Shown here piece by piece: positions 2,148-63,091 of a DNA stretch of 64,000 bases. Location of the stretch: contig NC_135760.1 of assembly GCF_052425735.1 (NCBI RefSeq), positions 3,782,001-3,846,000 on the forward strand. The letters are read 5' to 3'. A program made the position numbers and the translations under genes. The stretch is from Oculina patagonica (Eukaryota). The notes beneath the pieces are model-generated. The model searched no databases, was not told the DNA's origin, and saw only the letters and a program-made list of their open reading frames with translations. Each line of letters begins with the position of its first letter. Position 1 is the first letter of the stretch.

Positions 2148-3482
2148 ATGGCCGTCGTCGAGAAAAACTGGCAAACAACAAGACTCACCGTCAAAGAAAG
2201 ATGCAAGTTTATGATCAACAACGATCTCTTCAGCGATGTGAAATTTGTTGTTGTTTGCAAGACTGAGGGCGAACGTGAAAGTAGACATGCCGTGTTGCCA
2301 GCTCACAAGTTCGTGCTGTCAATTAGCAGTCCTGTGTTTGAAGCCATGTTTTACGGTGAGTTGGCGGAGACTGGAGACTCTATTGAACTGCCTGACTGTG
2401 AGTACGAGAGTCTGTTAGAGTTGTTTCGTTACATGTACAGCGATGAAGTGCAGTTAAGCGGAAGTAATGTGATGGGAGTTCTGTATTTGGCGAAGAAATA
2501 CATAGTGCCTTCATTAGCTGATAAATGCACGCAATATCTGCATAACAACTTAGATCCGTCGAATGTTTTCAGCATCTTACCATCTGCTCAGAGATATGAC
2601 GAGAAAGACCTGGTGGATCGTTGCTTGAAACTGATCGATGAACAAACAGAAGAGGCTGTAAAATCGGATGGATTTGCGGCAATTGAGAGGTCCTTACTTG
2701 AAGCAGTAGTCGTGAGAGACACTCTGACGATTCAAGAGATAGAGCTGTTTAAAGCGGTTAACTTGTGGGCAACAAGGGAATGCGAGAGACAAGGTTTAGC
2801 GGCAGATGGTGCAATGAAAAGAAAAATTCTTGGGGAAGAAATAATCAAAGGAATACGTTTCCCAACAATGAAACTGGAAGATTTCTCCAGTGTAGTCTTG
2901 GGCAGCGACATTTTAACAAAAAAAGAAATTGCAAGTATGACCAATTGTCTCGGTTCAGCGTCGAGTTTTCCAGTGAAATTTTCAGCAACAAAGAGACGTG
3001 GTTTTCAAGTTGATGGTGATATTCAACGATGTTGTAGATTTGGCTCACCGTCTGCTTGTGGATGGAGCTATACTGGCTCCACAGATGCTATCAGTTTCTC
3101 TGTGGACAAAGATATTGTGCTTCACGGAGTGTGCTTCTTTGGCAATGAGAATAAAGCTTACTCGGTAGACCTAAAGGTAGCTGATACCTTATCAGTTCTA
3201 GTGTCTAAAACTGGACAATTTTTTTCAGAGCTATTACAGGGAGAGAATTGCAGCTATTATGGTTTTAAAGTGAACTTTGACAAAGAGAAAGTCATTTTGA
3301 AGGAAAACACGAAGTACGACTTAAGGGCTAAAATATCAGGCTCTCCTTCGTTACGTGGAGTAAATTGTGTCAGTTCTGTTCAATGTTCAGATGTAACATT
3401 CACATTTATGACTAGTGACTACCCAAATTATGGAACGGATGTTAGTGAGGGCCAATTTCCAGAGTTGTTGTTTTCTCTTTAA
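2148..3482 (+). CDS. BTB/POZ-BACK-PHR protein (BTBD3/6-like), copy 1, 444 aa, single exon
   Basis: NWQ..RCKFM.NNDLFSDVKF, PAHKFVLSISSPVFEAMFYG, LYLAKKY (BTB); IELFKAV.LWA..EC.RQ and IRFPTM (BACK); RCCRF..DAISFSVDK..GQFPELLF (PHR). Confidence 0.95.
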   Translation: MAVVEKNWQTTRLTVKERCKFMINNDLFSDVKFVVVCKTEGERESRHAVLPAHKFVLSISSPVFEAMFYGELAETGDSIELPDCEYESLLELFRYMYSDEVQLSGSNVMGVLYLAKKYIVPSLADKCTQYLHNNLDPSNVFSILPSAQRYDEKDLVDRCLKLIDEQTEEAVKSDGFAAIERSLLEAVVVRDTLTIQEIELFKAVNLWATRECERQGLAADGAMKRKILGEEIIKGIRFPTMKLEDFSSVVLGSDILTKKEIASMTNCLGSASSFPVKFSATKRRGFQVDGDIQRCCRFGSPSACGWSYTGSTDAISFSVDKDIVLHGVCFFGNENKAYSVDLKVADTLSVLVSKTGQFFSELLQGENCSYYGFKVNFDKEKVILKENTKYDLRAKISGSPSLRGVNCVSSVQCSDVTFTFMTSDYPNYGTDVSEGQFPELLFSL

Positions 3483-4374
3483 ATAAACCTTGAACATTTC
3501 GTTTATCTATCACAGATCTTACCAAATGTCAGGTGTAGATACTCTTTTAATCAAACTACCGCGTCTTTTAAATCCTGGAGTAGAAAATGATTTTTTATTC
3601 CGAGGAAAGAAGGGTGGTTACATTGAAATAGTTTTAACGCCAAACTTAACTGAAGAATAAGCTTTTTGTTTGAATTTTCAGCAGGACACCATTTGCTCAA
3701 CTTTCTCGGAGAAACTCTTCAATTCCCAAAAGTGATAACAAATAAATTCGCCTTACAGTAATAGAAATGAGACGAGAAAAATGAACTAAGAAATATAACT
3801 TCATGTATGTACAAACAAGTTGTCCGAAACATACATTAGAAGCAAAAATGCGTGGACGTAAGCCCTTGTAAAATAACAAAACAGTACTGAAACTGTAGTG
3901 TTTTCTTGTTAGATATTTATATAAAAACTCTGATGCTTATAAATAAAACTACAATGATGAAATCATTTGGCTCGATCTATGCGTTTTAAGACATGAGCTC
4001 GGCTGAGAGAACACTCATGTCTTGCAACTGGGAAAATGTCACGCAAATATACTAATATCAGTCAAAGCTCATTTCTTCAATAATAAATGTATTATTACAT
4101 ACTCGTGTGAAGGAAAATAGGCTCCTGTTTTGTGATTGGACCCCCTTCTCCTTGTACCGCCCCGCTCAACTTGTCGTCATCTTATCCCCAAAACTATTGA
4201 CACAAACATTGTAAGAACCCTTTTTAAGAGAAACAGTGTCTGTTGTAAACAAGCGTTTCCTGCAAAATATATCGCCCTAACAATACGTTGCCTATGCGTG
4301 TGCAATAATTTTGATTTTTTTTTTCCGGTTTGTTTTTACATAATACCGCTTGGTTCGATTTTCAAACTCTCGGG

Positions 4375-4398
4375 GTCACGCCTAGTGTAGTGCGTGAC
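4375..4398 (+). promoter_or_regulatory. GTCACGC-N10-GCGTGAC palindrome upstream of copy 2
   Basis: Perfect 7-bp arms ~100 bp before the ATG; same motif at 31624-31647 before copy 7. Confidence 0.5.
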
Positions 4399-4494
4399 AA
4401 ATTCCATGTAAGTAATTACAGCGGGCTCAAGTTTCCACAAGAAATTCCATTATAATCAGTTTATATTGTAGCGTAGGATTTCACAACAGAAACC

Positions 4495-5832
4495 ATGTCT
4501 GTCGTCGAGGAAAACTGGCAAACTACAAGACCCACCATCATAGAAAGGAACAAGTTTATGTTCAACAACGATCTCTTCAGCGACGTGAAGTTTGTTGTTC
4601 GCAAGACTGATGGCGAAAGTGAAAGTAAACAAGTGATTCCAGCTCACAAGTTCGTGCTGTCGATTAGCAGTCCTGTGTTTGAAGCCATGTTTTACGGTGA
4701 TCTGGCGGAGTCTGGAGACTCTATTGAACTGCCTGACTGTGAGTACGATAACCTGTTGGAGTTGTTTCGTTACATGTATAGCGATGAAGTGCAGTTGAGC
4801 GGAAGCAATGTGATGGGAGTGTTGTATTTGGCAAAGAAATACATAGTGCCTTCACTGGCTGATAAATGCACGGAGTATTTGCAAGATAACTTAGATTCGT
4901 CGAATGTTTTCAGCATCTTGCCATCTGCTCGGAAATATGACGAAAAAAATCTTGTGGATCAATCCTGGAAAGTGATCGATAAACAGACAGAAGAGGCTGT
5001 AAAATCGGATGGATTTGCGACAATTGAGAGGTCCTTACTTGAAGCATTAGTCGTAAGAGACACTCTGACGATTGAAGAGATAGAGCTGTTTAAAGCTGTT
5101 GACTTGTGGGCAACAAAGAAATGTGAGAGGCAAGGTTTAGAGGAAGACGGAAAAGTGAAAAGAACAATTCTTGGAGAACAAATAATTAAAGGAATACGTT
5201 TCCCAACAATGAAACTGGAAGATTTCTCTAGTGTAGTGTTGCTCAGCGATATTTTAACGAAAAACGAAATTGCCAGTATTGTCAAAAGTCTCGGTTCACC
5301 GGCGAGTTCTCCAGTGGAATTTTCAGCAACAAAAAGACGTGGTTTTCAATTTTACGGTGATTTGCAACGATGCTGTAGATTTGGCTCACTTTTTAACAGT
5401 GTATGGACTGATAGTAGCTCCAATGTAGATGCCATCAGTTTCTCGGTGGACAAAGATATTGTTCTTCACGGAGTATGTTTATGTGGCAGTGGTAGTAATA
5501 TTTACTTTGTACAATTAGATATAATGGACTCAAAAAGCAAATTAATTTCCGTGTCTAAAACTGGACAATTTACTTCAGAGCTACTACAAGGAGAGAATTG
5601 CAACTATTATGGTTTTAAAGTGATATTTGACAAAAAGAAAATCGTTTTAAAGAAAAACACGAAGTATGACATAAGGGCTAAAATTTTAGCCTCTGTTCCA
5701 TGTTTTGGAGTGAACGGTGTCAGGTCTGTTCAGTGTTCAGGAGTTGCATTCTCATTTATGGACAGTAAATATTCAACTACTGAAACGGGCGTTACTCAGG
5801 GTCAGTTCCCCGAATTGTTGTTTTCTCTGTAA
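4495..5832 (+). CDS. BTB-BACK-PHR protein (BTBD3/6-like), copy 2, 445 aa
   Basis: Intact ORF with the same domain motifs; AAACCATG start context. Confidence 0.95.
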   Translation: MSVVEENWQTTRPTIIERNKFMFNNDLFSDVKFVVRKTDGESESKQVIPAHKFVLSISSPVFEAMFYGDLAESGDSIELPDCEYDNLLELFRYMYSDEVQLSGSNVMGVLYLAKKYIVPSLADKCTEYLQDNLDSSNVFSILPSARKYDEKNLVDQSWKVIDKQTEEAVKSDGFATIERSLLEALVVRDTLTIEEIELFKAVDLWATKKCERQGLEEDGKVKRTILGEQIIKGIRFPTMKLEDFSSVVLLSDILTKNEIASIVKSLGSPASSPVEFSATKRRGFQFYGDLQRCCRFGSLFNSVWTDSSSNVDAISFSVDKDIVLHGVCLCGSGSNIYFVQLDIMDSKSKLISVSKTGQFTSELLQGENCNYYGFKVIFDKKKIVLKKNTKYDIRAKILASVPCFGVNGVRSVQCSGVAFSFMDSKYSTTETGVTQGQFPELLFSL

Positions 5833-9227: not shown

Positions 9228-10559
9228 ATGTCTGTTGTCGAAGAAAGCTGGCAAACAACAAGACCCACCATCAGTGAAAGATGCAAGTTTATGTTCAACA
9301 ACGATCTCTTCAGCGATGTGAAGTTTGTTGTGCCAAAGGTCAATGAAGAAAATGAAAGTAAACAAGTGATTCCAGCTCACAAGTTCGTGCTTTCGATTAG
9401 CAGTCCTGTGTTTGAAGCCATGTTTAACGGTGAACTGGCGGAGACTGGAGACTCTATTGAACTGCCTGACTGTGAGTACGAGAGTCTGTTGGAGTTGTTC
9501 CGTTACATGTACTGCGATGAAGTGAACATAAACGGAAGTAATGTGATGGGAGTGTTGTATTTGGCAAAGAAATACATAGTGTCTTCACTGGCTGATAAAT
9601 GCACGAAATATGTACAAGATAATTTAGATCCGTCGAATATTTTCAGTATCCTGCCCTTTGTCCAGAAATACGAAGAAAAAACCTTGGTGGATCGATGCTG
9701 GAAAGTCATTGACGAAGAGACAGAAGAGGCTGTGAAATCAGATGGATTTGCGACAATTGAGAGGTCTTTACTTGAAGCTATAGTCGTAAGAGACACTCTG
9801 ACGATTGAAGAGATAGAGCTGTTTAAAGCTGTTGACTTGTGGGCGACAAAGGAAAGTGAATGGCAAGGTTTAGCGGCAGATGGTGCAATAAAAAGAAGAC
9901 TTCTCGGAGAAAAAGTGATTAAAGGAATACGCTTTCCAACAATGAAGCAAGAAGATTTCGCTAGCGTGGTACTGGACAGTAAACTGTTAATAACAGAAGA
10001 AATCGTCAATATTATCAAATATTTCAATTCAGTATCCACTTCTCCGGTAGGATTTCCAGAAACCAAAAGATCCGTGAACAGTGGTAATAATATACTACGA
10101 TGCTGTAGATTCGGCTCAGTGTCAGACCAAGCTTGCGGTTATGGTGACCGGAAGGATGCTATTAATTTCTCTGTAGACAAAGACATTGTACTATATGGAG
10201 TGTGCTTCTTTGGAAATCAAGAAAATGAACTTTTCTCAGTCGATTTGGAGGTGGTGGACGTCCAAGGTAAAAACGTCTTGATGTCAAATTCCGGAAGATT
10301 TTCCTCATCACTTCTACAGGCCGAGAAATGTAGTTATTATGGTTTTGAATTCTTACTTGAGAAGAAAATTATTCTAAGCAAAAACACCACGTACGGCATA
10401 AGGGTTTTCATATCAGGCTGTTCTTCGTTACGTGGAGTAAACTGTATCAGGTCTGTTCAATGTTCAGATGTAACATTCACATTTATGGACAGTGTGTACG
10501 CATGTAACGGAACGGATCTTAAACAGGGGCAATTTCCAGAATTATTGTTTTGCCTTTAA
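9228..10559 (+). CDS. BTB-BACK-PHR protein (BTBD3/6-like), copy 3, 443 aa
   Basis: Intact ORF; its PHR half is closest to copy 11. Confidence 0.95.
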   Translation: MSVVEESWQTTRPTISERCKFMFNNDLFSDVKFVVPKVNEENESKQVIPAHKFVLSISSPVFEAMFNGELAETGDSIELPDCEYESLLELFRYMYCDEVNINGSNVMGVLYLAKKYIVSSLADKCTKYVQDNLDPSNIFSILPFVQKYEEKTLVDRCWKVIDEETEEAVKSDGFATIERSLLEAIVVRDTLTIEEIELFKAVDLWATKESEWQGLAADGAIKRRLLGEKVIKGIRFPTMKQEDFASVVLDSKLLITEEIVNIIKYFNSVSTSPVGFPETKRSVNSGNNILRCCRFGSVSDQACGYGDRKDAINFSVDKDIVLYGVCFFGNQENELFSVDLEVVDVQGKNVLMSNSGRFSSSLLQAEKCSYYGFEFLLEKKIILSKNTTYGIRVFISGCSSLRGVNCIRSVQCSDVTFTFMDSVYACNGTDLKQGQFPELLFCL

Positions 10560-15847: not shown

Positions 15848-17180
15848 ATGTCTGTCGTCGAGAAAAACTGGCAAACAACAAGACCCACCATCAGAGAAAG
15901 AAGCAAGTTTATGTTTAACAATGATCTCTTCAGCGATGTGAAGTTTGTTGTTCGCAAGTCTGACGGCGAAAGTGAAAGTAAACAAGTGATTCCAGCTCAC
16001 AAGTTCGTACTGTCGATTAGCAGTCCTGTGCTTGAAGCCATGTTTTACGGTGAGCTGGCGGAGACTGGAGACTCTATTGAACTGCCTGACTGTGAGTACG
16101 AGAGCCTGTTGGAGTTGTTTCGTTACGTGTACAGCGATGAAGTGAACTTTTGCGGAAGAAATGTGATGGGAGTATTGTATTTGGCGAAGAAATACATGGT
16201 GCCTTCTCTGGCCGACAAATGTACTAAATATCTCCAAGACAACTTAGATCCGTCGAATGTTTTGAGCATCCTGCCCTCTGCCCAGAAATATGAAGAGAAA
16301 GACTTGGTGGATCAATGCTGGAAAGTGATCGATAAACAGACAAAAGAGGCCGTGAAATCAGAGGGATTTGCGACAATTGAGAGGTCCTTACTTGAAGCAG
16401 TTGTCGTAAGAGACACTTTGACGATTGAAGTGAGATTGAGATGTTTAAAGCTGTTGACTTGTGGGCAACAAAGGAGTGTGAGAGACAAGGTTTAGCGGCA
16501 GATGGTGCAATAAAACGAAGAATTCTCGGAGAAGAAGTGATTAAAGAAATACGTTTCCAGCAATGAAGCAAGAAGATTTCGCAAGCGTGGTGTTAGACAG
16601 TGAAATGTTAAATCTAAAAGAAATCGTCAGTGTTATCAAGCATCTGAATTCAGTTGCCAGTTCTCCAGTGGGATTTCCACAAATTAAACGATCTGGTTTT
16701 TGCGGAGATATTCAACGATGTTGTAGATTTGGTTCGATGTCAAATCATTTTCGTAGTTATTCTGGCCTGTCACACGACGCCATCAAATTCTCTGTGGACA
16801 AAGATATTGAGCTACACGGAGTGTGCTTCTGTGGTAGTGAAAATAATATTTACTCTGTAGAATTGAAGCTAACAGACACCACGAGTGGAACAGATTTGGT
16901 GTTTAAAAATGGACAATTTCCGTCAAAGCTATTGGGCGAGAAATATAGCTACTATGGTTTTGAAGTGTTGTTTGACCAAAAAATCACCTTAAACAAAAAT
17001 ACCACGTACGAGATATGGGCTCAAATAACAGGACCTGATTCGATACGTGGAGAAAACGGTAGCGGTTCTGTTAAATGTCGAGAAGTAACATTCATGTTTA
17101 TGGAGAGGAGCAGCTTGTTCAATGAAACGACCGTTCAATGTGGTCAGTTTCCCGAATTGTTGTTTTCCTCTAGAGAATAA
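15848..17180 (+). pseudogene. BTB-BACK-PHR copy 4, frameshifted
   Basis: +2 insertion near 16430 (GAAGTGAGATTGAG vs GAAGAGATAGAG) and -1 near 16558; split into 215-aa and 205-aa ORFs. Confidence 0.9.
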
Positions 17181-18859: not shown

Positions 18860-20194
18860 ATGTCTGTCGTCGAGAAAAACTGGCAAACAACCAGACCGAC
18901 CATCAAAGAAAGAAACAAGTTTATGTTCAACAACGAGCTCTTCAGCGACGTGAAGTTTGTTGTTCGCAAGACTGACGACGAAAGTGAAAGTAAACAAGTG
19001 ATTCCAGCTCACAAGTTCGTACTGTCGATTAGCAGTCCTGTGTTTGAAGCCATGTTTTACGGTGAGCTGGCGGAGACTAAAGACTCTATTGAGCTGCCTG
19101 ACTGTGAGTACGAGAGCCTGTTAGAGTTGTTTCGCTACATGTACAGCGATGAAGTTCAGTTGAGCGGAAATAATGTGATGGGAGTGTTGTATTTGGCAAA
19201 GAAATACATAGTGCCTTCACTGGCTGATAAATGCACGGAATTTCTGAAAAACAACTTAGATCCGTTGAATGTTTTGAGCATCCTGCCCTCCGCCAAGAAA
19301 TATGAAGAGAAAGACCTAGTGGATCGATGCTGGGAAGTGATTGATAAAAAGGCAGAAGAGACCGTGAAATCTGATGTATTTGTGACAATTGAGAGGTCCT
19401 TACTTGAAGCAGTAGTCGTAAGAGACACTCTGACGATTGAAGAGATAGAGCTGTTTAAAGCTGTTGACTTGTGGGCAACAAAGGAGTGTGAGAGGCGAGG
19501 TTTAGCGGCAGATGGTGCAGGAAAGAGAAGAATTGCCGGAGAAGAAGTGATTAAAGGAATACGCTTTCCAACAATGAAGCAAGAAGATTTTGCTAGTGTA
19601 GTACTGAACAGCAAAATTCTAACATTAGACGAAATTGTCAGTATTATCCAATATCTTAGTTCCGTCCCGAGTTCTCCAGTGGGATTTCCAGAAACAAAAA
19701 GAGTTGGTTTTCGCGGTGATATTCTACGATGTTCTAGATTTGGCTCGTTGTTAGGCCCTTATTTTCAATATAGGGACTTCGAATACGATGAAATCGAATT
19801 CTCCGTGAACAAAGATATTGTGCTTCAAGGAGTTTGCTTATTCGGTAGTGAGAATAATTCTTACTCGGTCAACTTGACGGTAACTGACACCGAAACAAAC
19901 TCAGTTCTGATGACTAAAACTGGACAATTTCCCTCAAAGCTATTACAGTGCGAGAATTATACCTATTATGGGTTTGAAGTGTTGTTTGACATGAAAATAA
20001 TTTTAAAGACAAACACCACGTACGCGGTATGGGCTGAAATAACAGGACCTGATTCGTTACGCGGAGAAGCGGGTGTCGATTCTGTTAATTGTCGAGGTGT
20101 TACATTCACGTTTTTCGAGGACGAAGAAGCCTGTTTTAATACAACGGACATTCAATTTGGTCAATTTTCTGAATTACTTTTTACTTTCAAATAG
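18860..20194 (+). CDS. BTB-BACK-PHR protein (BTBD3/6-like), copy 5, 444 aa
   Basis: Intact ORF; PHR loops are unusually acidic. Confidence 0.95.
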   Translation: MSVVEKNWQTTRPTIKERNKFMFNNELFSDVKFVVRKTDDESESKQVIPAHKFVLSISSPVFEAMFYGELAETKDSIELPDCEYESLLELFRYMYSDEVQLSGNNVMGVLYLAKKYIVPSLADKCTEFLKNNLDPLNVLSILPSAKKYEEKDLVDRCWEVIDKKAEETVKSDVFVTIERSLLEAVVVRDTLTIEEIELFKAVDLWATKECERRGLAADGAGKRRIAGEEVIKGIRFPTMKQEDFASVVLNSKILTLDEIVSIIQYLSSVPSSPVGFPETKRVGFRGDILRCSRFGSLLGPYFQYRDFEYDEIEFSVNKDIVLQGVCLFGSENNSYSVNLTVTDTETNSVLMTKTGQFPSKLLQCENYTYYGFEVLFDMKIILKTNTTYAVWAEITGPDSLRGEAGVDSVNCRGVTFTFFEDEEACFNTTDIQFGQFSELLFTFK

Positions 20195-21913: not shown

Positions 21914-22100
21914 TATACACCACTTTCATAATGGCGGCCAATTTACTTATTCTTTTATATGTATGTTAATTAGCCCTACTGGCCTCGTTTTAGAGTAAAA
22001 ATTATTTTGAATTTTTCACATGCTGACGAGGCCAGTAGGGCTAATTAACATACATATAAAAGAATAAATAAATTGGCCGCCATTATGAAAGTGGTGTATA
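21914..22100. mobile_element. Palindromic MITE (~187 bp)
   Basis: ~75-bp near-perfect inverted arms starting TATACACCACTTTCATAATGGCGGCCAATTTA. Confidence 0.75.
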
Positions 22101-24729: not shown

Positions 24730-27568
24730 TCATCTTATTCTTGTAAACTCTGAACGCCCCTTCATGACTAGTGCCAGGTCACAAGCGGAGCTATTGGCGT
24801 CATACGCGTCGTGTCTGAGGTTAGTGAGGACTGGGGTCAAGTAGCTTCAAGTCCTGTTGACACCACCTAAAGAATGACACCACTCATAAGCACTTTTCTT
24901 CTTTAGTTTATACCACAGTTAAGATCGGGTCGATAAAAAACGAGAGTGGATGAGACTTAAGGGATAAGAATTGCACAAGAGTTTTCTTCAACTCTCATCA
25001 CCTACCATCATTGCGCAGTCAATCGAGCTAATAGTACGTGAAAGTTGATATCATCTACCTGTCGAACAAGTGGAAACTGGTGTTCACACTCATAGAACTT
25101 TGATCAGGTTTAATTTCGACGAGAGTCGTTTATAGTGTAAACCACAAAGAGAGTTTGAACTCGTGTTCTTGTTTGAACCAGTTTTATGGTGGCTAACGAT
25201 ACTTCAGACGTTTTCGTCTTGGGCAATCTATCACAAGTAGTCCAATACTGCTGACAACTAATGTAAAACGGTAAAGTATTTAAACGTACTCTGATCCGTA
25301 AGTACTCACAATTGGTTGCCATAGCATCGTCAGTAGCAGTCAAAGGTAACCAAATTATCATATGTTGAGGCTAATAACTACAAACAGACAGTTTGACCAT
25401 TTCATTTCTTTTTCAGAGCTACTTCATTTTCTAATAAAGTTAAGTTGTCTCTGAACCCGTACATCTGAGTACAGCACACAAAGCTAACTTTTCCTTTTAT
25501 TTCCACAAACGGTCGCATTTCTATTTTTGTCTCGAGTAATTATATGAAATGGCTGAGATGGGTGTCTCTGAGAGTGAAACTAAATGAACATGGTATTACC
25601 CTACCTCTTCGCAGCTTCAATGTCATGTTCTTTGGTCTCTTCCAAGACGCATGCTCTATTAGCAAGGACGCTGTCAAAAAGAAAAGGGATCATTTTATAT
25701 GTATGAGTTAAACGGAAAGAACGGATTGTAGAATAATAGCAATTTTAATCTTGCCGATAAATGAGAGGATCAAGAGTGCAATGCCCATGGCTTAAACTAG
25801 GACCTCTGGAAGAGCAAACTATTTTCGACTATTTGGTCTCCAATAAATTGCGAAATAAGGATTGCCATACCCATGTAAATCCTTGCCAAGCTAAACGCCA
25901 GATCGCGCGCAGGCAGCGAATCAGAGAGCAGCTCGTAGTTTTGTGGAGACAGCAAGGTATTCATGAAAGACTGAACTTGTTGCGACAAAATCTTCAGGGA
26001 GGGGTGGGACGAAGAGGCCTTTGACAACTTGTCGGAGACGCTAGCGTGGAAAGCCTTCAGTACCTGCGTATCAACAAGAATGATATGGATTAGACAATAA
26101 CAGGATATTAAGAGTGCTGTGAGGAAATTTACGTACAACATTTATATACATGGAGGCACATAAAGCGGTTTTCTTTTGAGTGCTGTAATACCAGAAACAA
26201 AGTAATCACTCTTGCCATTACAAAGGACACAAACAATACAGCGAGCCAATCATAACTCAAAGAAAATACATGTAGCCGCCGCGAAGCGCGGGAAAATGTG
26301 TGTGAGCGAGTCACGAATAGGTTTGGTTTAATTTACTTCTGATTGATTGACAAAGTGGTGCGGGATTTTTAAACCAATGGCCAAGTGCAGTACTGAATGC
26401 AAAACCAAACCAACGCAATTTCGACACTCAAGTAAAAACTGCTCAAAAAAGTAGATACATTAGATTGTTTTATGTCTAGCCTAGGAAACAAGAGCCATGA
26501 GAGACGCCTGCTAACTCGGGCTCTTCCGCAAATCTTCGTAAAACCACGCGAAGTGTTTCCGATTGTTATAAGCCAGTCAGAAACTAGCACGACCACTCCG
26601 AAAGCTGTCAGGTCAGTTAATCGCCATCAAGACATGTCAAACGCCCTATTTAGTAACCTCCCGCCAAAAACCGCGAGGTGAGGTAAACGTGAAGTCTACA
26701 TTCGAGCCTAGTGGCCATCAGGTCGGAACTTATCCCGGTTTCAGTAGCATGAAGCGACTAGAAGTATCTCTACTCCCCCCTGGATGGGATTTATCATTTT
26801 CATGTGAATTTGTTTGAAGTTGAAAGAAATTATTCTCAAGGGTAACATCTCGTGGTCTGAAATGGGACAACAAACAAATGAAGCTTAAAAGCAAACAAAA
26901 AATAGTAATCGATTAAGTGTGATCTGTAGAATCGGTGAAAAACATGTAAAAGGTGCAAGCGCAGGAGATAGAAAACGGCGCACGTATTTACATAGCCTGA
27001 TAAAAACACTCGAGAAAGTTTAGAAGATTTTAAAAAATGATGTTAATCAAGGACTTACAGAATTCGCTTGGACGGGCGTTTTTCACGTAAACTAAAAGCA
27101 GCGGTTTTCCGTCGCAATGTTTCAACATTGATTGACAGTTTCCTCGAAGCAACTAGCAACTTTAAGTTTAAAGTTGAACTTGGCAACTTACTTGGGCAAA
27201 TTTGAATTTTAAGCAAAGTTGCAAGTTGCTTCCAGCAAACTGCATTCAATATCGGGGACGTTGCGTAGAAGCATTGCAAAATTTTCAAAAACAAAATAAT
27301 GTAACCAGTGGGCAGCGCGCCCAGGAAAACGTCACCAGTGGAAAGTGCGGTCAAACAAGTAACGGGTGGCAATCGCGGGAAAACTCGAGTGCACGATCAA
27401 TTATAGAGCCAAAAGCTTAGAAAATTAATGTAAGTGTTAGTAAAAATTACTACTGTAAGAAAACGTTTTTTGATTCAAATTACAATTTACCTGTCCTTGA
27501 CTTTTAAACACCGACCTCAGTACGTCTAACGATAAAACATTCGTGGTTCCTTCCCAGATGGGCAAAAC
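24730..27568 (-). pseudogene. Acyl-CoA dehydrogenase (ACDH-11/AidB-like) last four exons, copy B
   Basis: Exons 27568-27491 ([19 protein letters not shown]..), 26063-25871 (..ARDLAFSLARIYM), 25670-25605 (SLLIEHASW..DIEAAKR, apparent 1-nt deletion) and 24866-24730 (WCQQDL+10-nt insertion+TPVLTNLRHDAYD..DLALVMKG..stop). All splice sites are GT-AG. Confidence 0.85.
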
Positions 27569-28593
27569 CTTTCAAACGAAACAACATACAAGACAATCAA
27601 CTTCTTTAGCAAGTAAATTTTTTATCACTGATGTAAATTTTTATTGTAAATTTCATTTTTAATAATATTTTACTGTAAAGCGCCATGAGCCATGGATATA
27701 ACGGAAGCCTTGAGCCAAGTGACCCATACTTGCCGGAGCTTATCGGATCTTTGATATTTCCGGCAACAAGAATTTTGTTGAAATAGCCACAGCGAAGAAA
27801 AAAATTAAATAAGACAACTACGGCGAATCTCTCGGCTTCGACGGCGAACTGATGTAGTCACAAATGCCCTGCATCATCAGCATGCAGGGCTTGTTTTTAG
27901 GTCCAGCAGGTTTAACAGGCAAAAAACCATCAAATCGAAAAGTAGATAAATACAAAAATTCAAAAACTTTCTTTGCTTGACCTACTAACTATTATTTCGC
28001 TACAAAGGGCTCGTACAAGGTAATAGATTTTCACTTATTCGCTGTGGCTGATCAAGACGTCATAACTTCAATAAAAAAGTTAAAAGGAAACAATTTACAT
28101 AATGAGAGGTTGCATTAAAATATATTTTCTATTAGAGTCGGAATTGCTGCACTTATCTGGCAACCAACTAACGTAATATATTCTGATCAAACATAGCAAA
28201 GTAAAAGCAAATAAGACAGCCGAGCGATAAGCAAACCTCACCTTTGAAAAATTTACGAAGAATGCTTAAAACGGCGGGCAGAAGTCCGAAAATAATGGCC
28301 CGTTAAGGTCAAGTAATCAGTGGAAAAATATTTTTAGTGATCGAAAATTTTTGATCACTTGAGAACTAATTATATGTCAGTCGAGAAATTTTCATCGGTC
28401 ACGTATTAAAACAGTTTCTTAATGAAATGCACGAGAAACTCCTGCTCTTGTGTACTTTATAAACACGTCGTTTTTTAATTAATCCGTTAAAAAATTAAAT
28501 TGATTTAAAAGGCCCCTCTCAAAATGCACAGGAAACTGCTGCTCTGTGTACTCGATTCAGAGTCACGTCAAAATTAACGTGCCCGAGAAACTC

Positions 28594-29273: not shown

Positions 29274-30602
29274 ATGACTTTCGTCGAAGAAATCTGGCAA
29301 ACAACAAAACCAACCATCAGAGAAAGGTGCAAGTTTATGTTCAACAATGATCTTTTCAGCGATGTAAAGTTTGTTGTGCCAAAGGCCGATGGCGAAAGCG
29401 GAAGTAAAAAAGTGATTCCTGCTCATAAGTTCATGTTGTCGATAAGCAGTCCTGTGTTTGAAGCCATGTTTTACGGAGATCTGGCGGAGACTGGAGCCTC
29501 TGTTGAACTGCCTGACTGTGAGTACGATAGTCTGTTGGAGTTGTTTCGTTTCATGTACAGCGATGAGGCGAACATAAGTGGAAGTAATGTGATGGGAGTG
29601 TTGTATTTGGCGAAGAAATACATAGTGCCTTCACTGGCTGATAAATGCACGGAATATCTACAAGACAACTTAGATCCCTGTAATGTGTTTAGCATCCTGC
29701 CATCCGCTCAGAAATATAAAGAGAAAAATCTGGAGGAAAAGTGCTGGAAATTGATCGATAAACAGACAGAAGAGGCTGTGAAATCTGATGGATTTGTGGC
29801 AATTGAGAGGTCCTTACTTGAAGAAGTAGTCGTGAGAGACACTCTAACGATTCAAGAGATAGAGCTGTTTAAAGCTGTTAACTTGTGGGCAACAAGGGAA
29901 TGCGAGAGACAAGATTCAGCGTCAGATGGTGCAATGAAGAGAAAAATTCTTTGAGAAGAAATAATCAAAGGAATACGTTTCCCAACAATGAAACTAGAAG
30001 ATTTCTCCAGTGTAGTCTTGGGCAGCGACATTTTAACAAAAAAAGAAATTGCAAGTATGACCGATTGTCTCGGTTCAGCGTCGAGTTTTCCAGTGAAATT
30101 TTCAGCAACAAAAAGACGTGGTTTTCAAGTTGATGGTGATATTCAACGATGTTGTAGATTTGGCTCACCGTCTGCTTGTGGATGGAGTTATACTGGCTCC
30201 ACAGATGCTATCAGTTTCTCTGTGGACAAAGATATTGTGCTTCACGGAGTGTGCTTCTTTGGTAATGAGAATAAAGCTTACTCGGTAGACTTGAAGGTAA
30301 ATGATACCTTATCAGTTCTAGTGTCTAAAACTGGACAATTTTTTTCAAAGCTATTACAGGTAGAGAATTGCAGCTATTATGGTTTTAAAGTGAACTTTGA
30401 CAAAGAGAAAGTCATTTTGAAGAAAAACACGAAGTACGACATGAAAGCTAAAATATCAGGCTCTCCTTCGTTACGTGGAGTAAACTGTGTCAGTTCTGTT
30501 CAATGTTCAGATGTAACATTTACATTTATGACTAGTGACTACCCAAATAATGGGACGGATGTTAGTGAGGGCCAATTTCCAGAGTTGTTGTTTTCTCTTT
30601 AA
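29274..30602 (+). pseudogene. BTB-BACK-PHR copy 6, single premature stop
   Basis: TGA at 29952-29954 aligns to a Gly codon (GGA/GGG) in paralogs; otherwise in frame; 3' half nearly identical to copy 1. Confidence 0.9.
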
Positions 30603-31735: not shown

Positions 31736-33203
31736 ATGGCTGTCGTCGAAAAAAACTGGCAAACTACAAGACCCACCATCAGAGATAGAAACAAGTTCAT
31801 GTTCAACAACGATATCTTCAGCGATGTGGAGTTTGTTGTTCGGAAGACTGATGGCGAGAGTGAAAGTAAACAAGTGATTTGAATTGAATTGACTTTATTT
31901 CCCATAATAGAATAATACAGCATGTATATTTTTCTGTTACAATCTGCATTAGGGAGGAAGACTAAGGAAACCCTCGCGGGCTTTTACAAAACCATGGCTG
32001 TCGTCGAAGTTCGTGCTGTCGATAAGCAGTCCTGTGTTTGAAGCCATGTTTTACGGTGAGCTGGCGGAGACTGGAGACTCTATTGAACTGCCTGACTGTG
32101 AGTACGATAGTCTGTTGGAGTTGTTTCGCTACATGTATAGCGATGAAGTGCACTTGAGCGGAAGCAATGTGATGGGAGTGTTGTATTTGGCGAAGAAATA
32201 CATAGTGCCTTCACTGGCTGATAAATGCACGGAATATCTGAAAGATAACTTAGATCCGTCGAATGTTTTCAGCATCTTGCCATCTGCTCGGAAATATGAC
32301 GAGAAAAATCTTGTGGATCAATGCTGAAAAGTGATCGATAAACAGACAGAAGAGGTCGTGAAATCTGATGGATTTGCGACAATTGAGAGGTCCTTACTTG
32401 AAGCAGTAGTCGTAAGAGACAGTCTGACGATTGAAGAGATAGAGCTGTTTAAAGCTGTTGACCTGTGGGCAAAAAAGGAATGCGAGAGGCAAGGTTTAGC
32501 GGCAGATGGTGCAATAAAGAGAAGAATTCTTGGAGAACAAATAATCAAAGGAATACGTTTCCCAACAATGAAATTGGAAGATTTCTCTAGTGCGGTTTTA
32601 GACAGCGACATATTAAAAAAATAAGAAATTGTCACTATTATTAAACGTCTCAGTTCAGTCTCGAGTTCTCCAGTAGCATTTCCAGAAACAAGAAGATGTG
32701 GTTTTCAATTTGACGGTAATATTCAGCGATGTTGTAGATTCGGCTCATCGACTGGCAGTGGATGGAGCTATAGTGGCTTCATCATGATAGATGCCATCCG
32801 TTTCTCTGTGGACAAGGATATTTTGCTTCATGGAGTTTGCTTCTTTGGAAGTGAGAATAACACTTACTATGTAGAATTAGATATAATTGACTCCAACAGC
32901 AAATCAATTTTTGTGTCTAAAACTGAACGATTTCCTTCAGAACTGTTACAGGGAGAGAATTGTAGCTATTATGGTTTTAAAGTGATGTTTGACAAAGAGA
33001 AGGTCATTTTAAAGAAAAACACAAGGTACGATATAAGGGCCAAAATATTAGGCTCTCCTTCGCTATATGGAAACAGTTGTGTCAGTTCTGTTCAATGCTC
33101 AGGAGTAACATTTACATTTATGAATATTAAGAGTCAACACTCAAATATCAGAACGGAAACTGTTCAGGGTCAATTTCCAGAATTGTTGTTTTCTCTTAAA
33201 TAA
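31736..33203 (+). pseudogene. BTB-BACK-PHR copy 7, insertion plus nonsense codons
   Basis: Insertion at ~31880-32006 in the BTB; TGA at 32325-32327 (Trp position) and TAA at 32622-32624 (Glu position). Confidence 0.9.
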
Positions 33204-35362: not shown

Positions 35363-36697
35363 ATGTCTGTCGTCGAAGAAAGCTGGCAAACAACAAGACT
35401 CAACATCAGTGAAAGATGCAAGTTTATGTTCAACAACGATCTCTTCAGCGACGTGTCGTTTGTTGTGCAAAAGGCCAATGAAGTAAATGATAGTAAACAG
35501 GTGATTCCTGCTCACAAGTTCGTACTGTCGATTAGCAGTCCTGTATTTGAAGCCATGTTTTACGGTGAGCTGGCTGAGACTGGGGACTCTATTGAACTGC
35601 CTGACTGTGAGTACGAGAGTCTGTTGGAATTCTTTCACTACATATACAGCGATGAATTGAACATAAGCGGAAGAAATGTGATGGGAGTATTATATTTGGC
35701 GAAGAAATACATGGTGCCTTCACTGGCTGACAAATGCGCAAAATATCTGCAGGACAACTTAGATCCGTCGAATGTTTTCAGCATACTGCCCTCTGCTCAG
35801 AAATATGAAGAGAAAAACCTCGTGGATCGATGCTGGGAAGTTATCGATAAACAGACAGTAGAGGCTGTGAAATCAGATGGATTTGTGACAATTGACAGGT
35901 CCTTACTTGAAGTACTAGTCGTGAGAGACACTCTGACGATTGAAGAGATAGAGCTGTTTAAAGCTGTTGACTTGTGGGCAACAAAGGAGTGTGAGAGACA
36001 AGGTTTAGCGGCAGAAGGAGAAATGAAAAGAATAGTTCTTGAAGAGCAAATAATCAAAGGAATACGTTTTCCAACAATGAAACTGGAAGATTTCTGCGAT
36101 GTGGTGTTATACAGCGACATTTTAACAAAAATAGAAATTGTTAGTATTGTTAAATGTCTCGGTTCAGCGTCGAGTTCTCCAGTCGGATTTTCAGAAACAA
36201 AAAGATGTGGTTTGCAATTGGACAGTGATATTCAGCGATGTACTAGAATTGGCTCATTGCCTAGCAGTGGATGGCATTATAGTGGCCGCCGAGACGCTAT
36301 CAGTTTCTCTGTGGACAAAGATATTGTGCTTCATGGAGTGTGCCTCTTTGGAAGTGAGAATAATGCCTACTCTGTAGAATTAGATGTAATGGACTCCAAC
36401 AGCAAATTAATTATTGTGTCTAAAACTGAACGATTTCCTTCAAAACTATTAGAGGAAGAGAATTATAGCTATTACGGTTTTAAAGTGTCGTTTGACAAAG
36501 AGGTCATTTTAAAGAAAAACACGAAGTACGTAATAAGGGCCAAAATATCAGGCTCTCCTTCGTTATGTGGAGTGAACTGTGTCAGTATTGTTAACTGTTC
36601 AGGAGTAACATTCACATTTATGAATAATGAATACTCGACTAATAAAACGGATATTTATGACGGCCAATTTCCTGAATTGCTGTTTTCTCTTAAATAA
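35363..36697 (+). CDS. BTB-BACK-PHR protein (BTBD3/6-like), copy 8, 444 aa
   Basis: Intact ORF with all three domains. Confidence 0.95.
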   Translation: MSVVEESWQTTRLNISERCKFMFNNDLFSDVSFVVQKANEVNDSKQVIPAHKFVLSISSPVFEAMFYGELAETGDSIELPDCEYESLLEFFHYIYSDELNISGRNVMGVLYLAKKYMVPSLADKCAKYLQDNLDPSNVFSILPSAQKYEEKNLVDRCWEVIDKQTVEAVKSDGFVTIDRSLLEVLVVRDTLTIEEIELFKAVDLWATKECERQGLAAEGEMKRIVLEEQIIKGIRFPTMKLEDFCDVVLYSDILTKIEIVSIVKCLGSASSSPVGFSETKRCGLQLDSDIQRCTRIGSLPSSGWHYSGRRDAISFSVDKDIVLHGVCLFGSENNAYSVELDVMDSNSKLIIVSKTERFPSKLLEEENYSYYGFKVSFDKEVILKKNTKYVIRAKISGSPSLCGVNCVSIVNCSGVTFTFMNNEYSTNKTDIYDGQFPELLFSLK

Positions 36698-56567: not shown

Positions 56568-56747
56568 ATGTCTGTCGTCAAAGAAAGCTGGCAAACAACA
56601 AGACTCACCATCAATAAAAGAAGCAAGTATATGTTCAACAACGATCTTTTCAGCGATGTGAAGTTTGTTGTTCGCAATACTAGTGACGGTGAAAGTAAAA
56701 GTAAACAAGTGATTCCAGCTCATAAGTTCGTGCTTTCGATTAGCAGC
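56568..56747 (+). pseudogene. BTB copy 10, 5' fragment only
   Basis: MSVVKESWQTT..PAHKFVLSISS, then an abrupt join to sequence homologous to ~13175. Confidence 0.85.
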
Positions 56748-61192: not shown

Positions 61193-61537
61193 TTAGTTTT
61201 TAATTAGTGTCACCAATTAGTGTGTAAAACGCTAGAACGATTGACAATAAAGTTTACTACTTTTACTACTATCCAGAGGAAGTCGTTAATGCTAATACTC
61301 GCCGGATGCAATTACTAACAGACCTAACAGACTATGAAGAATATTCTCTCTGAGTTGCGCTCTGTCAACCATAACAGATACCGACATTGCTATACTTTTA
61401 ACACTGATTCACGAACACTCCAAATCACGGCATAAGCACAACTGACCAGTCTTGCATTCACCAACAACACTTGAGCATTTGCTGTTTTCCTAACACGTGT
61501 TTATTGCTCATATAAGACGCAACTTGACTAAATTAGT

Positions 61538-61635
61538 TAGCGTGACCGAGAAATGTTTACACCAACAAACACATATCCTGTCACGCTAACTGATTGCGTG
61601 ATGACTTCCTCCTAAGTAATTTTATATTCAAATTT
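61538..61635 (+). promoter_or_regulatory. Upstream module of copy 12
   Basis: TAGCGTGACC..GTCACGCTAACTGATTGCGTGATGACTTCC..TTTTATATTCAAATT. Confidence 0.55.
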
Positions 61636-61744
61636 TATAAGCTACCGCTGGATCGAGTTGCCACCCACATTTCCACGAAAACTACACTGCTTCGCAAACT
61701 GAAATATTCTTCGTCTATATTTCTTCGTTCTCAGTACAGAAACC

Positions 61745-63091
61745 ATGGCTGTCGTCGAGAAAAACTGGCAAATAACAAGACCCACCATCAAAGAAAGAAA
61801 CAAGTTTATGTTCAACAATGATCTCTTCAGCGATGTGAAGTTCGTTGTTCGCAAGACTGATGGCGAAAGCGAAAGTAAACAAGTGATTCCTTCTCACAAG
61901 TTCGTGCTGTCGATTAGCAGTCCTGTGTTTGAAGCCATGTTTTACGGTGAGCTGGCGGAGACTGGAGACTCTATTGAACTGCCTGACTGTGAGTACGAGA
62001 GTTTGTTGGAGTTGTTTCGCTACATTTACAGCGATGAAGTGAACCTGACCGGAAGTAATGTGATGGGAGTGTTGTATTTGGCGAAGAAATACATGGTGCC
62101 TTCACTGGCTGATAAATGCACGGAGTATCTGCAAGATAACTTAGATCCTTCGAATGTTTTCTGTATCCTGCCCTCTGCTCAGAAATATGAAGAGAAGGAC
62201 CTGGTGGATCGATGCTGGAAAGTGATCGATAAACAGACAGACGAGGCTGTGAAATCAAACGGATTTGCGGCAATTGAGAGGTTCTTACTTGAAGCAGTAG
62301 TCGTAAGAGACACTTTGACGATTGAAGAGATAGAGCTGTTTAAAGCTGTTGACTTGTGGGCAACAAAGGAGTGTGAGATGCAAGGTTTAGCGGCAGATGG
62401 TGCAATAAAACGAAAAATTCTTGGAAAAGAAGTGATTAAAGGAATACGCTTTCCAACAATGAAGGAAGATGACTTCGCTCGTGCAGTGTTGGACAGTGAT
62501 ATTTTATCAAAAGAAGAAATCGTCAGCATCATCAAACATCTGAATTCAATCCCGAGTTCTCCAGTGGGATTCCCAGAAACCAAAAGGTCTGGTTTTTGCG
62601 GAGGTATTCAACGATGTTTTAGATTTGGCATGATCAGGTCAGAAGATACACGTCGTTATGGTGGCCCGATATACGATGCCGTCAAATTCTCTGTGGATAA
62701 AGATATTGAGCTACATGGAGTGTGCTTCTTTGGCAGTGAGAGTTATTCTTACTCTGTAGAATTGAATGTAACTGACGCCAAGAGTGGAACAGTTTTAGTG
62801 TCAAAAACTGGGCAATTTCCCTCAAAGCAATTACAGTGCGAGAAATATAGCTACTATGGTTTTGAAGTGTTGTTTGACAAAAAAAGTACTTTAACTTTAA
62901 AAAGAAACACCACGTACGAGATATGGGCTAAAATCTCAGGACCTCTTTCGTTAAGTGGACAAGACGGTATGGGCTCTGTTACATGTCGAGAAGTAACATT
63001 TACGTTTATGGAGGGGAACAACGCCTGGTTGAATGGAACGAAGGTCAAAACTGGTCAATTTCCCGAATTGTTGTTTTCCTTTAGAAAATAA
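61745..63091 (+). CDS. BTB-BACK-PHR protein (BTBD3/6-like), copy 12, 448 aa
   Basis: Intact ORF; PHR and 3' flank closest to copy 4. Confidence 0.95.
   Translation: MAVVEKNWQITRPTIKERNKFMFNNDLFSDVKFVVRKTDGESESKQVIPSHKFVLSISSPVFEAMFYGELAETGDSIELPDCEYESLLELFRYIYSDEVNLTGSNVMGVLYLAKKYMVPSLADKCTEYLQDNLDPSNVFCILPSAQKYEEKDLVDRCWKVIDKQTDEAVKSNGFAAIERFLLEAVVVRDTLTIEEIELFKAVDLWATKECEMQGLAADGAIKRKILGKEVIKGIRFPTMKEDDFARAVLDSDILSKEEIVSIIKHLNSIPSSPVGFPETKRSGFCGGIQRCFRFGMIRSEDTRRYGGPIYDAVKFSVDKDIELHGVCFFGSESYSYSVELNVTDAKSGTVLVSKTGQFPSKQLQCEKYSYYGFEVLFDKKSTLTLKRNTTYEIWAKISGPLSLSGQDGMGSVTCREVTFTFMEGNNAWLNGTKVKTGQFPELLFSFRK

What the first reader, a model, noticed from the sequence alone, without database searches (positions are those of the whole stretch)
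2148..63091. Twelve-copy array of intronless BTB-BACK-PHR ubiquitin-ligase adaptors with CDR-like hypervariable PHR loops: candidate diversified intracellular recognition system
Seen: the BTB core (PAHKFVLSISSPVFEAMFYGELAETGDSIELPDCEYESLLELFRY) is almost invariant, while three PHR segments differ across copies and carry indels. Loop 1 follows RCxRxG: SPSACGWSYTGST / SLFNSVWTDSSSNV / SVSDQACGYGDRK / SMSNHFRSYSGLSH / SLLGPYFQYRDFEY / SLPSSGWHYSGRR / MIRSEDTRRYGGPIY. Loop 2 is SLRGVNC / CFGVNG / SLYGNSC / SLSGQDG. Loop 3 precedes GQFPELLF: TSDYPNYGTDVSE / DSKYSTTETGVTQ / EDEEACFNTTDIQF / EGNNAWLNGTKVKT. Known: BTB-BACK binds CUL3, and these same segments (WRYRGRCD, SYFGQEG, STNGTGVQGGQIP) are conserved in BTBD3/6. 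Expanded nematode and plant MATH-BTB and F-box families show the same constant-scaffold, variable-binder pattern and are proposed to act in immunity. Inference: this is a birth-and-death repertoire that targets foreign (viral, symbiont or transposon) proteins for degradation.
Basis: partly seen in the sequence, partly recalled or inferred. Interest (0 to 1): 0.9.

Follow-up and report, generated by a model that had tools for sequence, protein, structure and literature searches.

The report
Diversifying ubiquitin-adaptor gene array in coral
A stony coral carries a tandem array of single-exon BTB-BACK-PHR genes, likely CUL3 ubiquitin-ligase adaptors, whose ligase-binding half is kept uniform while a few loops of the PHR domain evolve under positive selection; what these proteins bind is unknown.

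Summary
The window (Oculina patagonica, scaffold CM126637.1) has 12 same-strand BTB-BACK-PHR loci. Seven are intact single-exon ORFs of 443-448 aa. Four are pseudogenes and one is a 60-codon stub. The array runs past the window, with 3 more copies in the next 21 kb. A second array lies 2 Mb away, and the scan noted three more on other pieces of this genome.

Pfam, a predicted structure and PDB matches confirm the architecture, and a CUL3-type phi-x-E motif is conserved. My codon site models matched IQ-TREE's likelihood. They reject neutrality for the linker-PHR half (LRT 47-61, p below 1e-10).

The BTB-BACK half is under purifying selection. It is also homogenised by gene conversion: its dS is half that of the PHR and the two halves give conflicting trees.

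RNA-type runs cover g1 and g2 plus a 3'UTR, but not the intergenic DNA.

This is a new variant of a known kind, the adaptively evolving ubiquitin-ligase adaptor families. The new feature is the PHR domain as the variable module, in a cnidarian. The claim that it targets foreign proteins is untested. I could not check 3D clustering because no model coordinates were available.

The parts
2148..3482 (+). g1, intact BTB-BACK-PHR gene (444 aa). Loop 1 is at 3048-3083, loop 2 at 3342-3362 and loop 3 at 3411-3449.
   Evidence: ORF. Pfam BTB, BACK and PHR all above the curated cut-off. AF2 model with PHR pLDDT about 90. RNA contigs with 0-2 mismatches over the PHR part.
3483..4007 (+). 3'UTR of g1
   Evidence: RNA contigs run from 3462 to 4007 with 0 mismatches in X1. 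Depth is zero at 4049-4442.
1950..2147 (+). Promoter and 5'UTR block of g1. It has GCGTGAC at 1952 (+) and 1983 (-) and a TATA-like TTATATTCAAATT about 123 nt before the ATG.
   Evidence: Upstream alignment of the 12 copies. Heptamer count 26 against 3.6 expected. The same positions recur in other arrays and assemblies.
4495..5832 (+). g2, intact (445 aa)
   Evidence: RNA depth over the gene body.
9228..10559 (+). g3, intact (443 aa), a recent duplicate of g11
   Evidence: dS to g11 is 0.20.
15848..17180 (+). g4, pseudogene with two frameshifts near 16430 and 16555
   Evidence: tblastn pieces lie in three frames.
18860..20194 (+). g5, intact (444 aa)
29274..30602 (+). g6, pseudogene with one in-frame stop near codon 229. 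It is 88% identical to g1 and has the same loop 1.
31736..33203 (+). g7, pseudogene with a ~120-bp disruption after codon 48 and two in-frame stops. It is the g2-like partner in the duplicated g1-g2 / g6-g7 block.
35363..36697 (+). g8, intact (444 aa)
43956..46684 (+). g9, pseudogene split at about codon 180 by a transposon-like insertion
   Evidence: tblastn gives two pieces, 43956-44492 and 45911-46681.
44482..45917 (.). 1.4-kb non-autonomous element with 70-nt terminal inverted repeats, inserted in g9
   Evidence: Inverted repeat I1 has arms 44482-44551 and 45848-45917, 96% complementary.
56568..56747 (+). g10, a stub holding only the first 60 codons
58367..59704 (+). g11, intact (445 aa). 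It carries a 72-nt patch (59551-59622) 97% identical to g1 3335-3406, which covers loop 2.
61745..63091 (+). g12, intact (448 aa)
488..1014 (-). Duplicated fragment of the 3' exons of an ACAD10/11-like acyl-CoA dehydrogenase gene. It flanks the first copy of the array.
   Evidence: 89-95% identical to L003 5503-5756 and 6280-6365, which are the real gene's 3' part. The called fragment has a weak ACDH-11_C hit.
25883..27591 (-). Second copy of the same ACAD 3' fragments, upstream of g6. It marks a block duplication of [ACAD fragment + g1 + g2].
   Evidence: 89-90% identical to window 488-766 and 909-1014.

Best explanation
This is part of a large, old, lineage-specific expansion of single-exon BTB-BACK-PHR genes in stony corals. 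The proteins most likely act as substrate receptors of CUL3-RING ubiquitin ligases.

Each gene has its own small promoter and is transcribed. The array grew by block duplication and loses copies to frameshifts, stops and a transposon insertion.

The N-terminal BTB-BACK half is the part that would dimerise and dock on CUL3. It is kept nearly uniform by purifying selection and by gene conversion between neighbouring copies.

The C-terminal PHR beta-sandwich keeps older, partly trans-species lineages. A handful of residues in its loops change under positive selection. Most are in the loop after the first strand, on either side of a conserved W-x-Y anchor. One more lies in each of two later loops.

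Shown here: the architecture, the fold, the array anatomy, transcription, the selection pattern and the mosaic history.

Inferred: that the BTB-BACK binds CUL3, that the PHR loops bind substrates, and that diversification retargets the ligase to different or changing partners. The class of partner, host or foreign, is unknown.
For: Architecture and fold:
- Pfam BTB, BACK and PHR are all above the cut-off in three copies.
- The AF2 PHR domain has pLDDT about 90.
- Top Foldseek hits are BTBD2 PHR (3NO8) and MYCBP2 PHR (3GBW, 3HWJ). The BTB-BACK part matches KLHL11-CUL3 and KBTBD2-CUL3 complexes.
- The closest reviewed proteins are BTBD6/BTBD3 at 36-38% identity.
- L72-A73-E74 aligns with the M-S-E of KLHL3 in a CUL3 complex entry. 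L72 is invariant and E74 at least 90% conserved in 72 members.

Selection on the linker-PHR half:
- 13 sequences: M2a vs M1a LRT 46.8, M8 vs M7 52.9, M8 vs M8a 40.7.
- Gap-free columns only: LRT 27.1.
- Halves analysed on their own trees: LRT 55.5 for the half with loop 1 and 7.6 for the other.
- A grid model with synonymous-rate variation keeps sites 302, 303, 305 and 400.
- 18 sequences: LRT 61.0, with sites 301, 303, 305, 311, 400 and 434.
- My M0 likelihood equals IQ-TREE's.
- 16 null simulations gave a maximum LRT of 1.56.
- In close pairs the loops have dN/dS of 1.2-1.9, against 0.32 for the PHR framework and 0.28 for BTB-BACK.

Gene conversion:
- dS is 0.35 in BTB-BACK and 0.70 in PHR.
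- The pair L002a-L002c has dS 0.15 in the N half and 0.75-1.05 in the PHR.
- AU tests reject each half's tree on the other half's data (p 8e-47 and 8e-9).

Expression:
- Depth covers the gene bodies and a 3'UTR and is zero in intergenic stretches.

Scale:
- More than 120 close family clusters in public data.
- 25 Atlas clusters, mostly Cnidaria.
- Arrays in two other coral assemblies and elsewhere on this scaffold.
- Other metazoans have 4-7 such genes (PMC1257465).
Against: - No binding data exist for any coral member.
- In vertebrate Btbd6 the mapped substrate Plzf is recruited through BTB heterodimerisation, not the PHR (10.1101/575910).
- Pooled over all pairs the three loops have dN/dS of 0.82, so much of the loop variation could be relaxed constraint. 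Only about 5% of sites carry the positive-selection signal.
- The BTB-BACK control also gives a weaker positive LRT (16.5). This shows that recombination can inflate these tests.
- Residual recombination inside the PHR half was not formally screened. One short conversion patch covers loop 2.
- Whether the selected sites share one surface could not be tested. A fourth hypervariable turn (345-348) probably lies at the other end of the domain.
- Expression rests on assembled contigs of runs whose RNA label is a guess. Only g1 and g2 were examined.
Confidence: 0.7

Rival explanations
1. The loops are simply unconstrained. The family is a set of redundant duplicates drifting apart, and the variable loops have no specific recognition role.
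For: Pooled loop dN/dS is 0.82, close to 1. Five of 12 loci in the window are dead. The youngest pair, g3/g11, shows no loop divergence (dN 0.07).
Against: Models with a neutral class are rejected in favour of a class with omega 3.5-7. This holds with gap-free columns, with separate trees and with synonymous-rate variation. Null simulations reach an LRT of only 1.6. 48 of 194 PHR-half sites are under clear purifying selection, and conserved anchors (W306, Y308, G404, T430) sit inside the variable loops.
Confidence: 0.12
2. The PHR domain is not the substrate binder. Substrates are other BTB proteins captured by BTB heterodimerisation, as for Btbd6 and Plzf. The PHR loops instead tune localisation or regulation.
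For: Btbd6 binds Plzf through the BTB domain, and its PHR promotes nuclear localisation (10.1101/575910). The coral BTB is near identical among paralogs, so it could pair with a common partner.
Against: A uniform BTB cannot explain why selection diversifies the PHR loops. The PHR-like region of BTBD1/2 is reported to bind topoisomerase I (PMC1257465). Kelch, MATH and PHR occupy the same position in BTB-BACK adaptors.
Confidence: 0.13
3. The array is an inert by-product of segmental duplication at the 3' end of an acyl-CoA dehydrogenase gene, or an assembly artefact, with no function of its own.
For: ACAD 3' exon fragments were co-duplicated with the genes. Some copies lie antisense inside host-gene introns.
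Against: Seven long ORFs stay open at dS of 0.2-0.65 between copies. BTB-BACK has omega 0.28-0.40. The promoters are conserved. There is RNA coverage. The copies are 70-88% identical, not collapsed or duplicated assembly repeats. Similar arrays occur in other assemblies.
Confidence: 0.03

Closest known systems
Vertebrate BTB-BACK-PHR (BBP) proteins BTBD6, BTBD3, BTBD1, BTBD2
   Same: The three-domain order is the same. Full-length identity is 34-38%. The PHR fold matches the BTBD2 crystal structure 3NO8. The BTB is 46% identical to the BTBD6 BTB structure 2VKP. The phi-x-E motif is conserved. The W-x-Y and NGT..GQ(I/F)P anchors are shared with BTBD2 and MYCBP2 PHR domains.
   Different: The coral genes are single-exon and lack the ~100-residue N-terminal extension. 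They occur in arrays of a dozen or more, against 4-7 genes per genome elsewhere (PMC1257465). Their loops are under positive selection. They are equally distant from BTBD3 and BTBD6, so 'BTBD6-like' is a nearest-hit label and not orthology.
Expanded MATH-BTB and F-box adaptor families of nematodes and plants (Thomas 2006, as cited in PMC8120010; Stogios 2005, PMC1257465)
   Same: [quoted passage not shown] Both have a proposed but unproven role against pathogens.
   Different: The variable module here is a PHR beta-sandwich, not MATH, FTH or FBA. The host is a cnidarian. The constant half is also homogenised by gene conversion, with strongly conflicting trees for the two halves.
TRIM5 / finTRIM-type E3 ligases with variable B30.2 (SPRY) loops (from my own knowledge, not tested here)
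   Same: A constant ligase part is joined to a beta-sandwich whose surface loops are hypervariable and positively selected. The genes sit in tandem arrays.
   Different: The coral proteins have no RING, B-box or coiled coil and an unrelated fold, and would work through CUL3. Antiviral function is proven for TRIM5 and unknown here.

Membership tests
BTB-BACK-PHR (BBP) family | N-terminal BTB/POZ domain | tested here: met
   PF00651 scores 86-97 bits against a cut-off of 20.5 in three copies. phmmer hit to the BTBD6 BTB structure 2VKP, E 2.6e-26.
BTB-BACK-PHR (BBP) family | BACK domain after the BTB | tested here: met
   PF07707 scores 34-41 bits against a cut-off of 20.9. Helical region 140-270 is modelled at pLDDT about 80 and aligns to KLHL11 and KBTBD2 BTB-BACK.
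BTB-BACK-PHR (BBP) family | C-terminal PHR beta-sandwich domain | tested here: met
   PF08005 scores 96-99 bits against a cut-off of 23.6, over the full profile length. Foldseek to 3NO8, 3GBW and 3HWJ gives target-normalised TM of 0.77-0.85.
BTB-BACK-PHR (BBP) family | One-to-one orthology with BTBD6, as the database name implies | tested here: inconclusive
   Identity is equal (36-38%) to BTBD6 and BTBD3. The genes are a single-exon, lineage-specific clade with many paralogs. No outgroup-rooted tree was made.
CUL3 substrate adaptors | phi-x-E motif in the BTB and a BACK 3-box that contact CUL3 | tested here: met
   L72-A73-E74 aligns to M-S-E of KLHL3 and is conserved in 72 members. This is the motif only.
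CUL3 substrate adaptors | Physical binding to CUL3 and substrate ubiquitination | not testable with these tools
   Shown only for vertebrate Btbd6 BTB-BACK (10.1101/575910).
Adaptively evolving ubiquitin-ligase adaptor families | Lineage-specific tandem expansion with gene death | tested here: met
   12 loci in the window plus 3 just beyond it, 6 of the 15 broken. Further arrays seen.
Adaptively evolving ubiquitin-ligase adaptor families | [quoted passage not shown] | tested here: met
   BTB-BACK omega is 0.28-0.40. PHR-half LRTs are 27-61, with the selected sites in the loops.
Adaptively evolving ubiquitin-ligase adaptor families | Selected sites form one binding surface | not testable with these tools
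   The structure tool returns no coordinates. Secondary structure places all selected sites in loops. Loops 2 and 3 flank one short hairpin (410-421), so they share an end.
Innate immune recognition repertoire | Induction by or binding to pathogen, symbiont or transposon products | not tested
   No condition metadata came with the runs. No relevant paper was found.

The most novel reading that the evidence does not exclude
Stony corals run a germline-encoded intracellular recognition repertoire of dozens to hundreds of BTB-BACK-PHR adaptors. Gene conversion keeps the BTB-BACK half interchangeable, so that all paralogs dock on CUL3 and can heterodimerise with each other, giving combinatorial pairs of PHR domains. 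The PHR loops diversify to follow proteins of viruses, bacteria, transposons or dinoflagellate symbionts and send them for degradation.
Probability: 0.15. Interest if true: 0.85.

Novelty: new variant of a known kind. Interest (0 to 1): 0.6.

Why it matters
The PHR domain has no well-defined ligand-binding mode, even in MYCBP2 or BTBD1/2/3/6. A family in which selection marks a few loop residues around conserved anchors points to where the domain contacts partners, and that prediction can be tested by pull-downs.

For coral biology, this adds a large, expressed, fast-evolving ubiquitin-ligase adaptor family to the expanded innate-immunity-type gene families. It is a candidate for host-microbe or host-symbiont conflict. 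Oculina patagonica is facultatively symbiotic (from my own knowledge), so symbiotic and aposymbiotic tissue of the same species can be compared.

The split history is also a clear example of mosaic evolution within single-exon genes: concerted evolution of the constant half and divergent evolution of the variable half.

Tried and rejected
- Rfam and tRNA scans of the window found nothing. The very high RNA depth at 1488-1881 is therefore not a known small RNA and looks like a dispersed repeat.
- Literature searches for BTBD6 or BTB-BACK-PHR with coral or cnidarian terms found no description of this expansion. 'PF08005' matched only Plasmodium gene names.
- One paper with BTB hits in corals concerned KCTD7, which is unrelated.
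- The PHR structure paper (PMC2881670) is not held. The 'apical conserved loops' point therefore rests on my memory only.
- The listing of cluster members gave no organism names for the unnamed relatives.
- A Pfam scan of the ACAD-like fragment failed on stop codons. I used nucleotide identity to the neighbouring gene instead.
- A run-length test for conversion tracts gave p of 0.002 at best. That does not survive correction for 36 pairs, so short-tract conversion is suggestive only. The half-versus-half incongruence is strong.
- No PAML or HyPhy is installed, so I wrote the site models myself and validated them.


Full report
**What is there**

The window is 39% G+C eukaryotic DNA with no gaps. 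Its proteins match a 30-Mb scaffold of the stony coral Oculina patagonica (CM126637.1 of GCA_052425735.1). g1 lies at 3,784,148 on that scaffold.

A tblastn with the first ORF finds 12 loci, all on the + strand.

- Seven are uninterrupted ORFs of 443-448 aa.
- Four are full-length but broken: two frameshifts; one stop; a disruption plus two stops; and a 1.4-kb insertion with 70-nt terminal inverted repeats.
- One is a 60-codon stub.

Two of them come only from pseudogenes.

**Architecture**

Three copies scanned against Pfam carry BTB, BACK and PHR above the curated cut-offs, and the PHR match covers the whole profile.

I made an AlphaFold2 model of g1 from a 72-member alignment. The BACK domain has pLDDT about 80 and the PHR about 90. 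The first 80 residues are poorly modelled.

Foldseek places the PHR on the crystal structures of BTBD2 PHR (3NO8) and MYCBP2 PHR (3GBW, 3HWJ). It places the BTB-BACK on KLHL11-CUL3 and KBTBD2-CUL3 complexes.

The closest reviewed proteins are BTBD6 and BTBD3 (36-38% identity), then BTBD1 and BTBD2 (34-35%). The coral proteins lack the ~100-residue N-terminal extension of these proteins.

In the phmmer alignment to KLHL3 (entry 4HXI), the coral L72-A73-E74 aligns with M-S-E. From my own knowledge of BTB-CUL3 structures, this is the phi-x-E contact. L72 is invariant and E74 at least 90% conserved in the 72 sequences.

**Variation**

Among the seven intact genes a 16-residue BTB core is identical. 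In the 72-member alignment mean column entropy rises from 0.51 bits (BTB) and 0.66 (BACK) to 1.28 (linker) and 1.48 (PHR).

The peaks are at g1 residues 301-311, 345-348, 423-427 and 432-434. Residues 399-405 are moderately variable, and the indels fall in these loops.

Conserved anchors sit inside the variable loops: W306 and Y308 in loop 1, G404 in loop 2, and T430 and G435-Q436-F437 around loop 3. They align with W-x-Y and NGT..GQ(I/F)P of BTBD2 and MYCBP2.

**Selection**

PAML and HyPhy are not installed, so I wrote GY94/F3x4 site models. Their M0 likelihood, −5075.28, equals IQ-TREE's on the same data and tree.

The first data set had 13 sequences: the seven intact window genes plus six from two other coral assemblies fetched with the look-up of encoding contigs. 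For the linker-PHR half:

| Test | LRT | Note |
|---|---|---|
| M2a vs M1a | 46.8 | p 7e-11; 5.5% of sites at omega 4.1 |
| M8 vs M7 | 52.9 | |
| M8 vs M8a | 40.7 | |
| M2a vs M1a, gap-free columns | 27.1 | gapped columns and their neighbours dropped |
| M2a vs M1a, residues 251-345, own tree | 55.5 | omega 7.1; sites 301-305, 311, 312 |
| M2a vs M1a, residues 346-444, own tree | 7.6 | p 0.02; sites 400, 434 |
| M2a vs M1a, 18 sequences | 61.0 | sites 301, 303, 305, 311, 400, 434 |

- A FUBAR-like grid that lets the synonymous rate vary keeps sites 302, 303, 305 and 400 at posterior above 0.9. It finds 48 of 194 sites under purifying selection.
- The 18-sequence set added five paralogs from the same genome.
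- Sixteen data sets simulated under the fitted M1a gave LRTs of at most 1.56, and refitting M1a from other starts did not change it.

Tree-free counts agree in direction. In closer pairs the three loops have dN/dS of 1.2-1.9. The PHR framework has 0.32 and BTB-BACK 0.28. Pooled over all pairs the loops give 0.82.

So most loop variation is near-neutral, and a small set of sites, mainly in loop 1, is positively selected.

As a caution, the BTB-BACK control also gave a weaker positive LRT (16.5, five scattered sites). That half is demonstrably recombinant.

**Mosaic history**

Synonymous divergence is about half as large in BTB-BACK (0.35) as in the PHR (0.70). For one pair of neighbours it is 0.15 against 0.75-1.05.

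Trees of the two halves conflict. L002a and L002c are sisters in the N half (99%) but belong to different PHR lineages. L003b groups with g3/g11 in the N half and with g12 in the PHR. AU tests reject each topology on the other half's data (p 8e-47 and 8e-9).

A 72-nt patch of g11 is 97% identical to g1 across loop 2, although the two PHR domains are otherwise divergent. This agrees with an earlier scan note, but the permutation p of 0.002 does not survive multiple-test correction.

**Array anatomy and growth**

Copies share about 300 nt upstream and up to about 450 nt downstream.

The upstream block has a TATA-like element about 123 nt before the ATG. It also has one or two GCGTGAC/GTCACGC heptamers at about −165 and −205. 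The same positions recur in other arrays of this genome and in the two other assemblies. The density is 2.9 per kb upstream against 0.21 per kb elsewhere.

Fragments of the 3' exons of an ACAD10/11-like gene flank g1 and recur upstream of g6. The real gene lies just right of the window, where two more copies sit antisense within its span. Together with the g1-g2 / g6-g7 correspondence, this shows growth by block duplication.

The 21 kb after the window hold three further copies, two intact and one broken. Another array lies 2 Mb away inside an M1 aminopeptidase gene. The scan has noted three more arrays on other pieces of this genome.

No pair is younger than dS of about 0.14-0.2, so the array is old rather than a recent burst.

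**Expression**

Contigs of four RNA-type runs were laid on 700-6600. They cover g1 and g2 and about 550 nt downstream of g1, with 0 mismatches in one run. Depth is zero in the intergenic bins 1882-2078, 4049-4442 and 6216-6600.

Contigs over the paralog-specific PHR part of g1 have 0-2 mismatches. No canonical splice joint falls in the coding regions.

Three caveats apply. The RNA label of the runs is a guess. Depth over the conserved BTB part is shared among paralogs. Only two genes were examined.

**Comparison with what is known**

Stogios et al. 2005 (PMC1257465) report four to seven BTB-BACK-PHR genes per metazoan genome. They expected the PHR to be the substrate module, and they note that the PHR-like region of BTBD1/2 binds topoisomerase I.

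Vertebrate Btbd6 binds the CUL3 N-terminal domain through its BTB-BACK. However, it recruits its known substrate Plzf by BTB heterodimerisation (10.1101/575910).

Expanded F-box and MATH-BTB families with a conserved docking domain and a positively selected recognition domain are known in nematodes and plants, and an immune role has been proposed for them (Thomas 2006, as cited in PMC8120010).

I found no paper describing such an expansion of the PHR class or in corals. NCBI labels these genes only 'BTBD6-like' or hypothetical.

**Verdict**

The functional part, targeting of foreign proteins, is untested. Whether the selected sites form one surface could not be checked, because the model's coordinates are not returned.

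From the secondary structure, loops 2 and 3 flank a short hairpin and so share an end. The hypervariable 345-348 turn probably lies at the end opposite loop 1.

Noticed in passing
window 1488-1881 (core about 1594-1731): A short element 420-550 nt upstream of g1 has RNA-contig depth up to 1800. Contigs diverge into many different flanks at 1594, so it looks like a dispersed, highly transcribed repeat. It contains TGACGTCA. There is no Rfam or tRNA match.
   Followed up: partly
window 1952-1989 and the equivalent places upstream of most copies; also L001, L002, L003, L004: A conserved promoter heptamer GCGTGAC/GTCACGC sits at about -165 and -205 from the ATG, with a TATA-like box at -123. It is 14-fold enriched upstream of the genes. 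Its core GCGTG resembles bHLH-PAS (AhR/ARNT-type) sites, which is a lead only.
   Followed up: partly
window 488-1014 and 25883-27591; L003 5503-6365: Three copies of the 3' exons of an ACAD10/11-like acyl-CoA dehydrogenase gene. Two are orphan fragments co-duplicated with the BTB genes. An Acyl-CoA_dh fragment also lies beside the array in another coral assembly (L002 20049-20240), which suggests conserved synteny.
   Followed up: partly
L003 (scaffold 3,846,343-3,867,686) and L004 (1,731,480-1,752,808): BTB-BACK-PHR genes sit antisense within the spans (presumably introns) of an ACAD gene and of an M1 aminopeptidase (ERAP1-like) gene.
   Followed up: no
window 44482-45917: A 1.4-kb non-autonomous DNA-transposon-like element with 70-nt terminal inverted repeats (96% complementary) is inserted in the coding region of g9.
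   Followed up: partly
window 21914-22100, 22283-22784, 28591-28692, 57695-57802: Palindromic, MITE-like hairpin elements (84-100% self-complementary) lie in the long intergenic stretches.
   Followed up: no
window 23472-23586: A 28-nt tandem repeat with 4.1 copies at 82% match.
   Followed up: no
window 59551-59622 versus 3335-3406 and 30455-30526: A 72-nt patch covering PHR loop 2 is 97% identical between otherwise divergent paralogs (g11 versus g1 and g6). It looks like a short gene-conversion tract that moves a loop between lineages.
   Followed up: partly
window 52001-56000: Strong negative AT skew (-0.185) in a gene-free stretch between g9 and g10. The cause was not examined.
   Followed up: no
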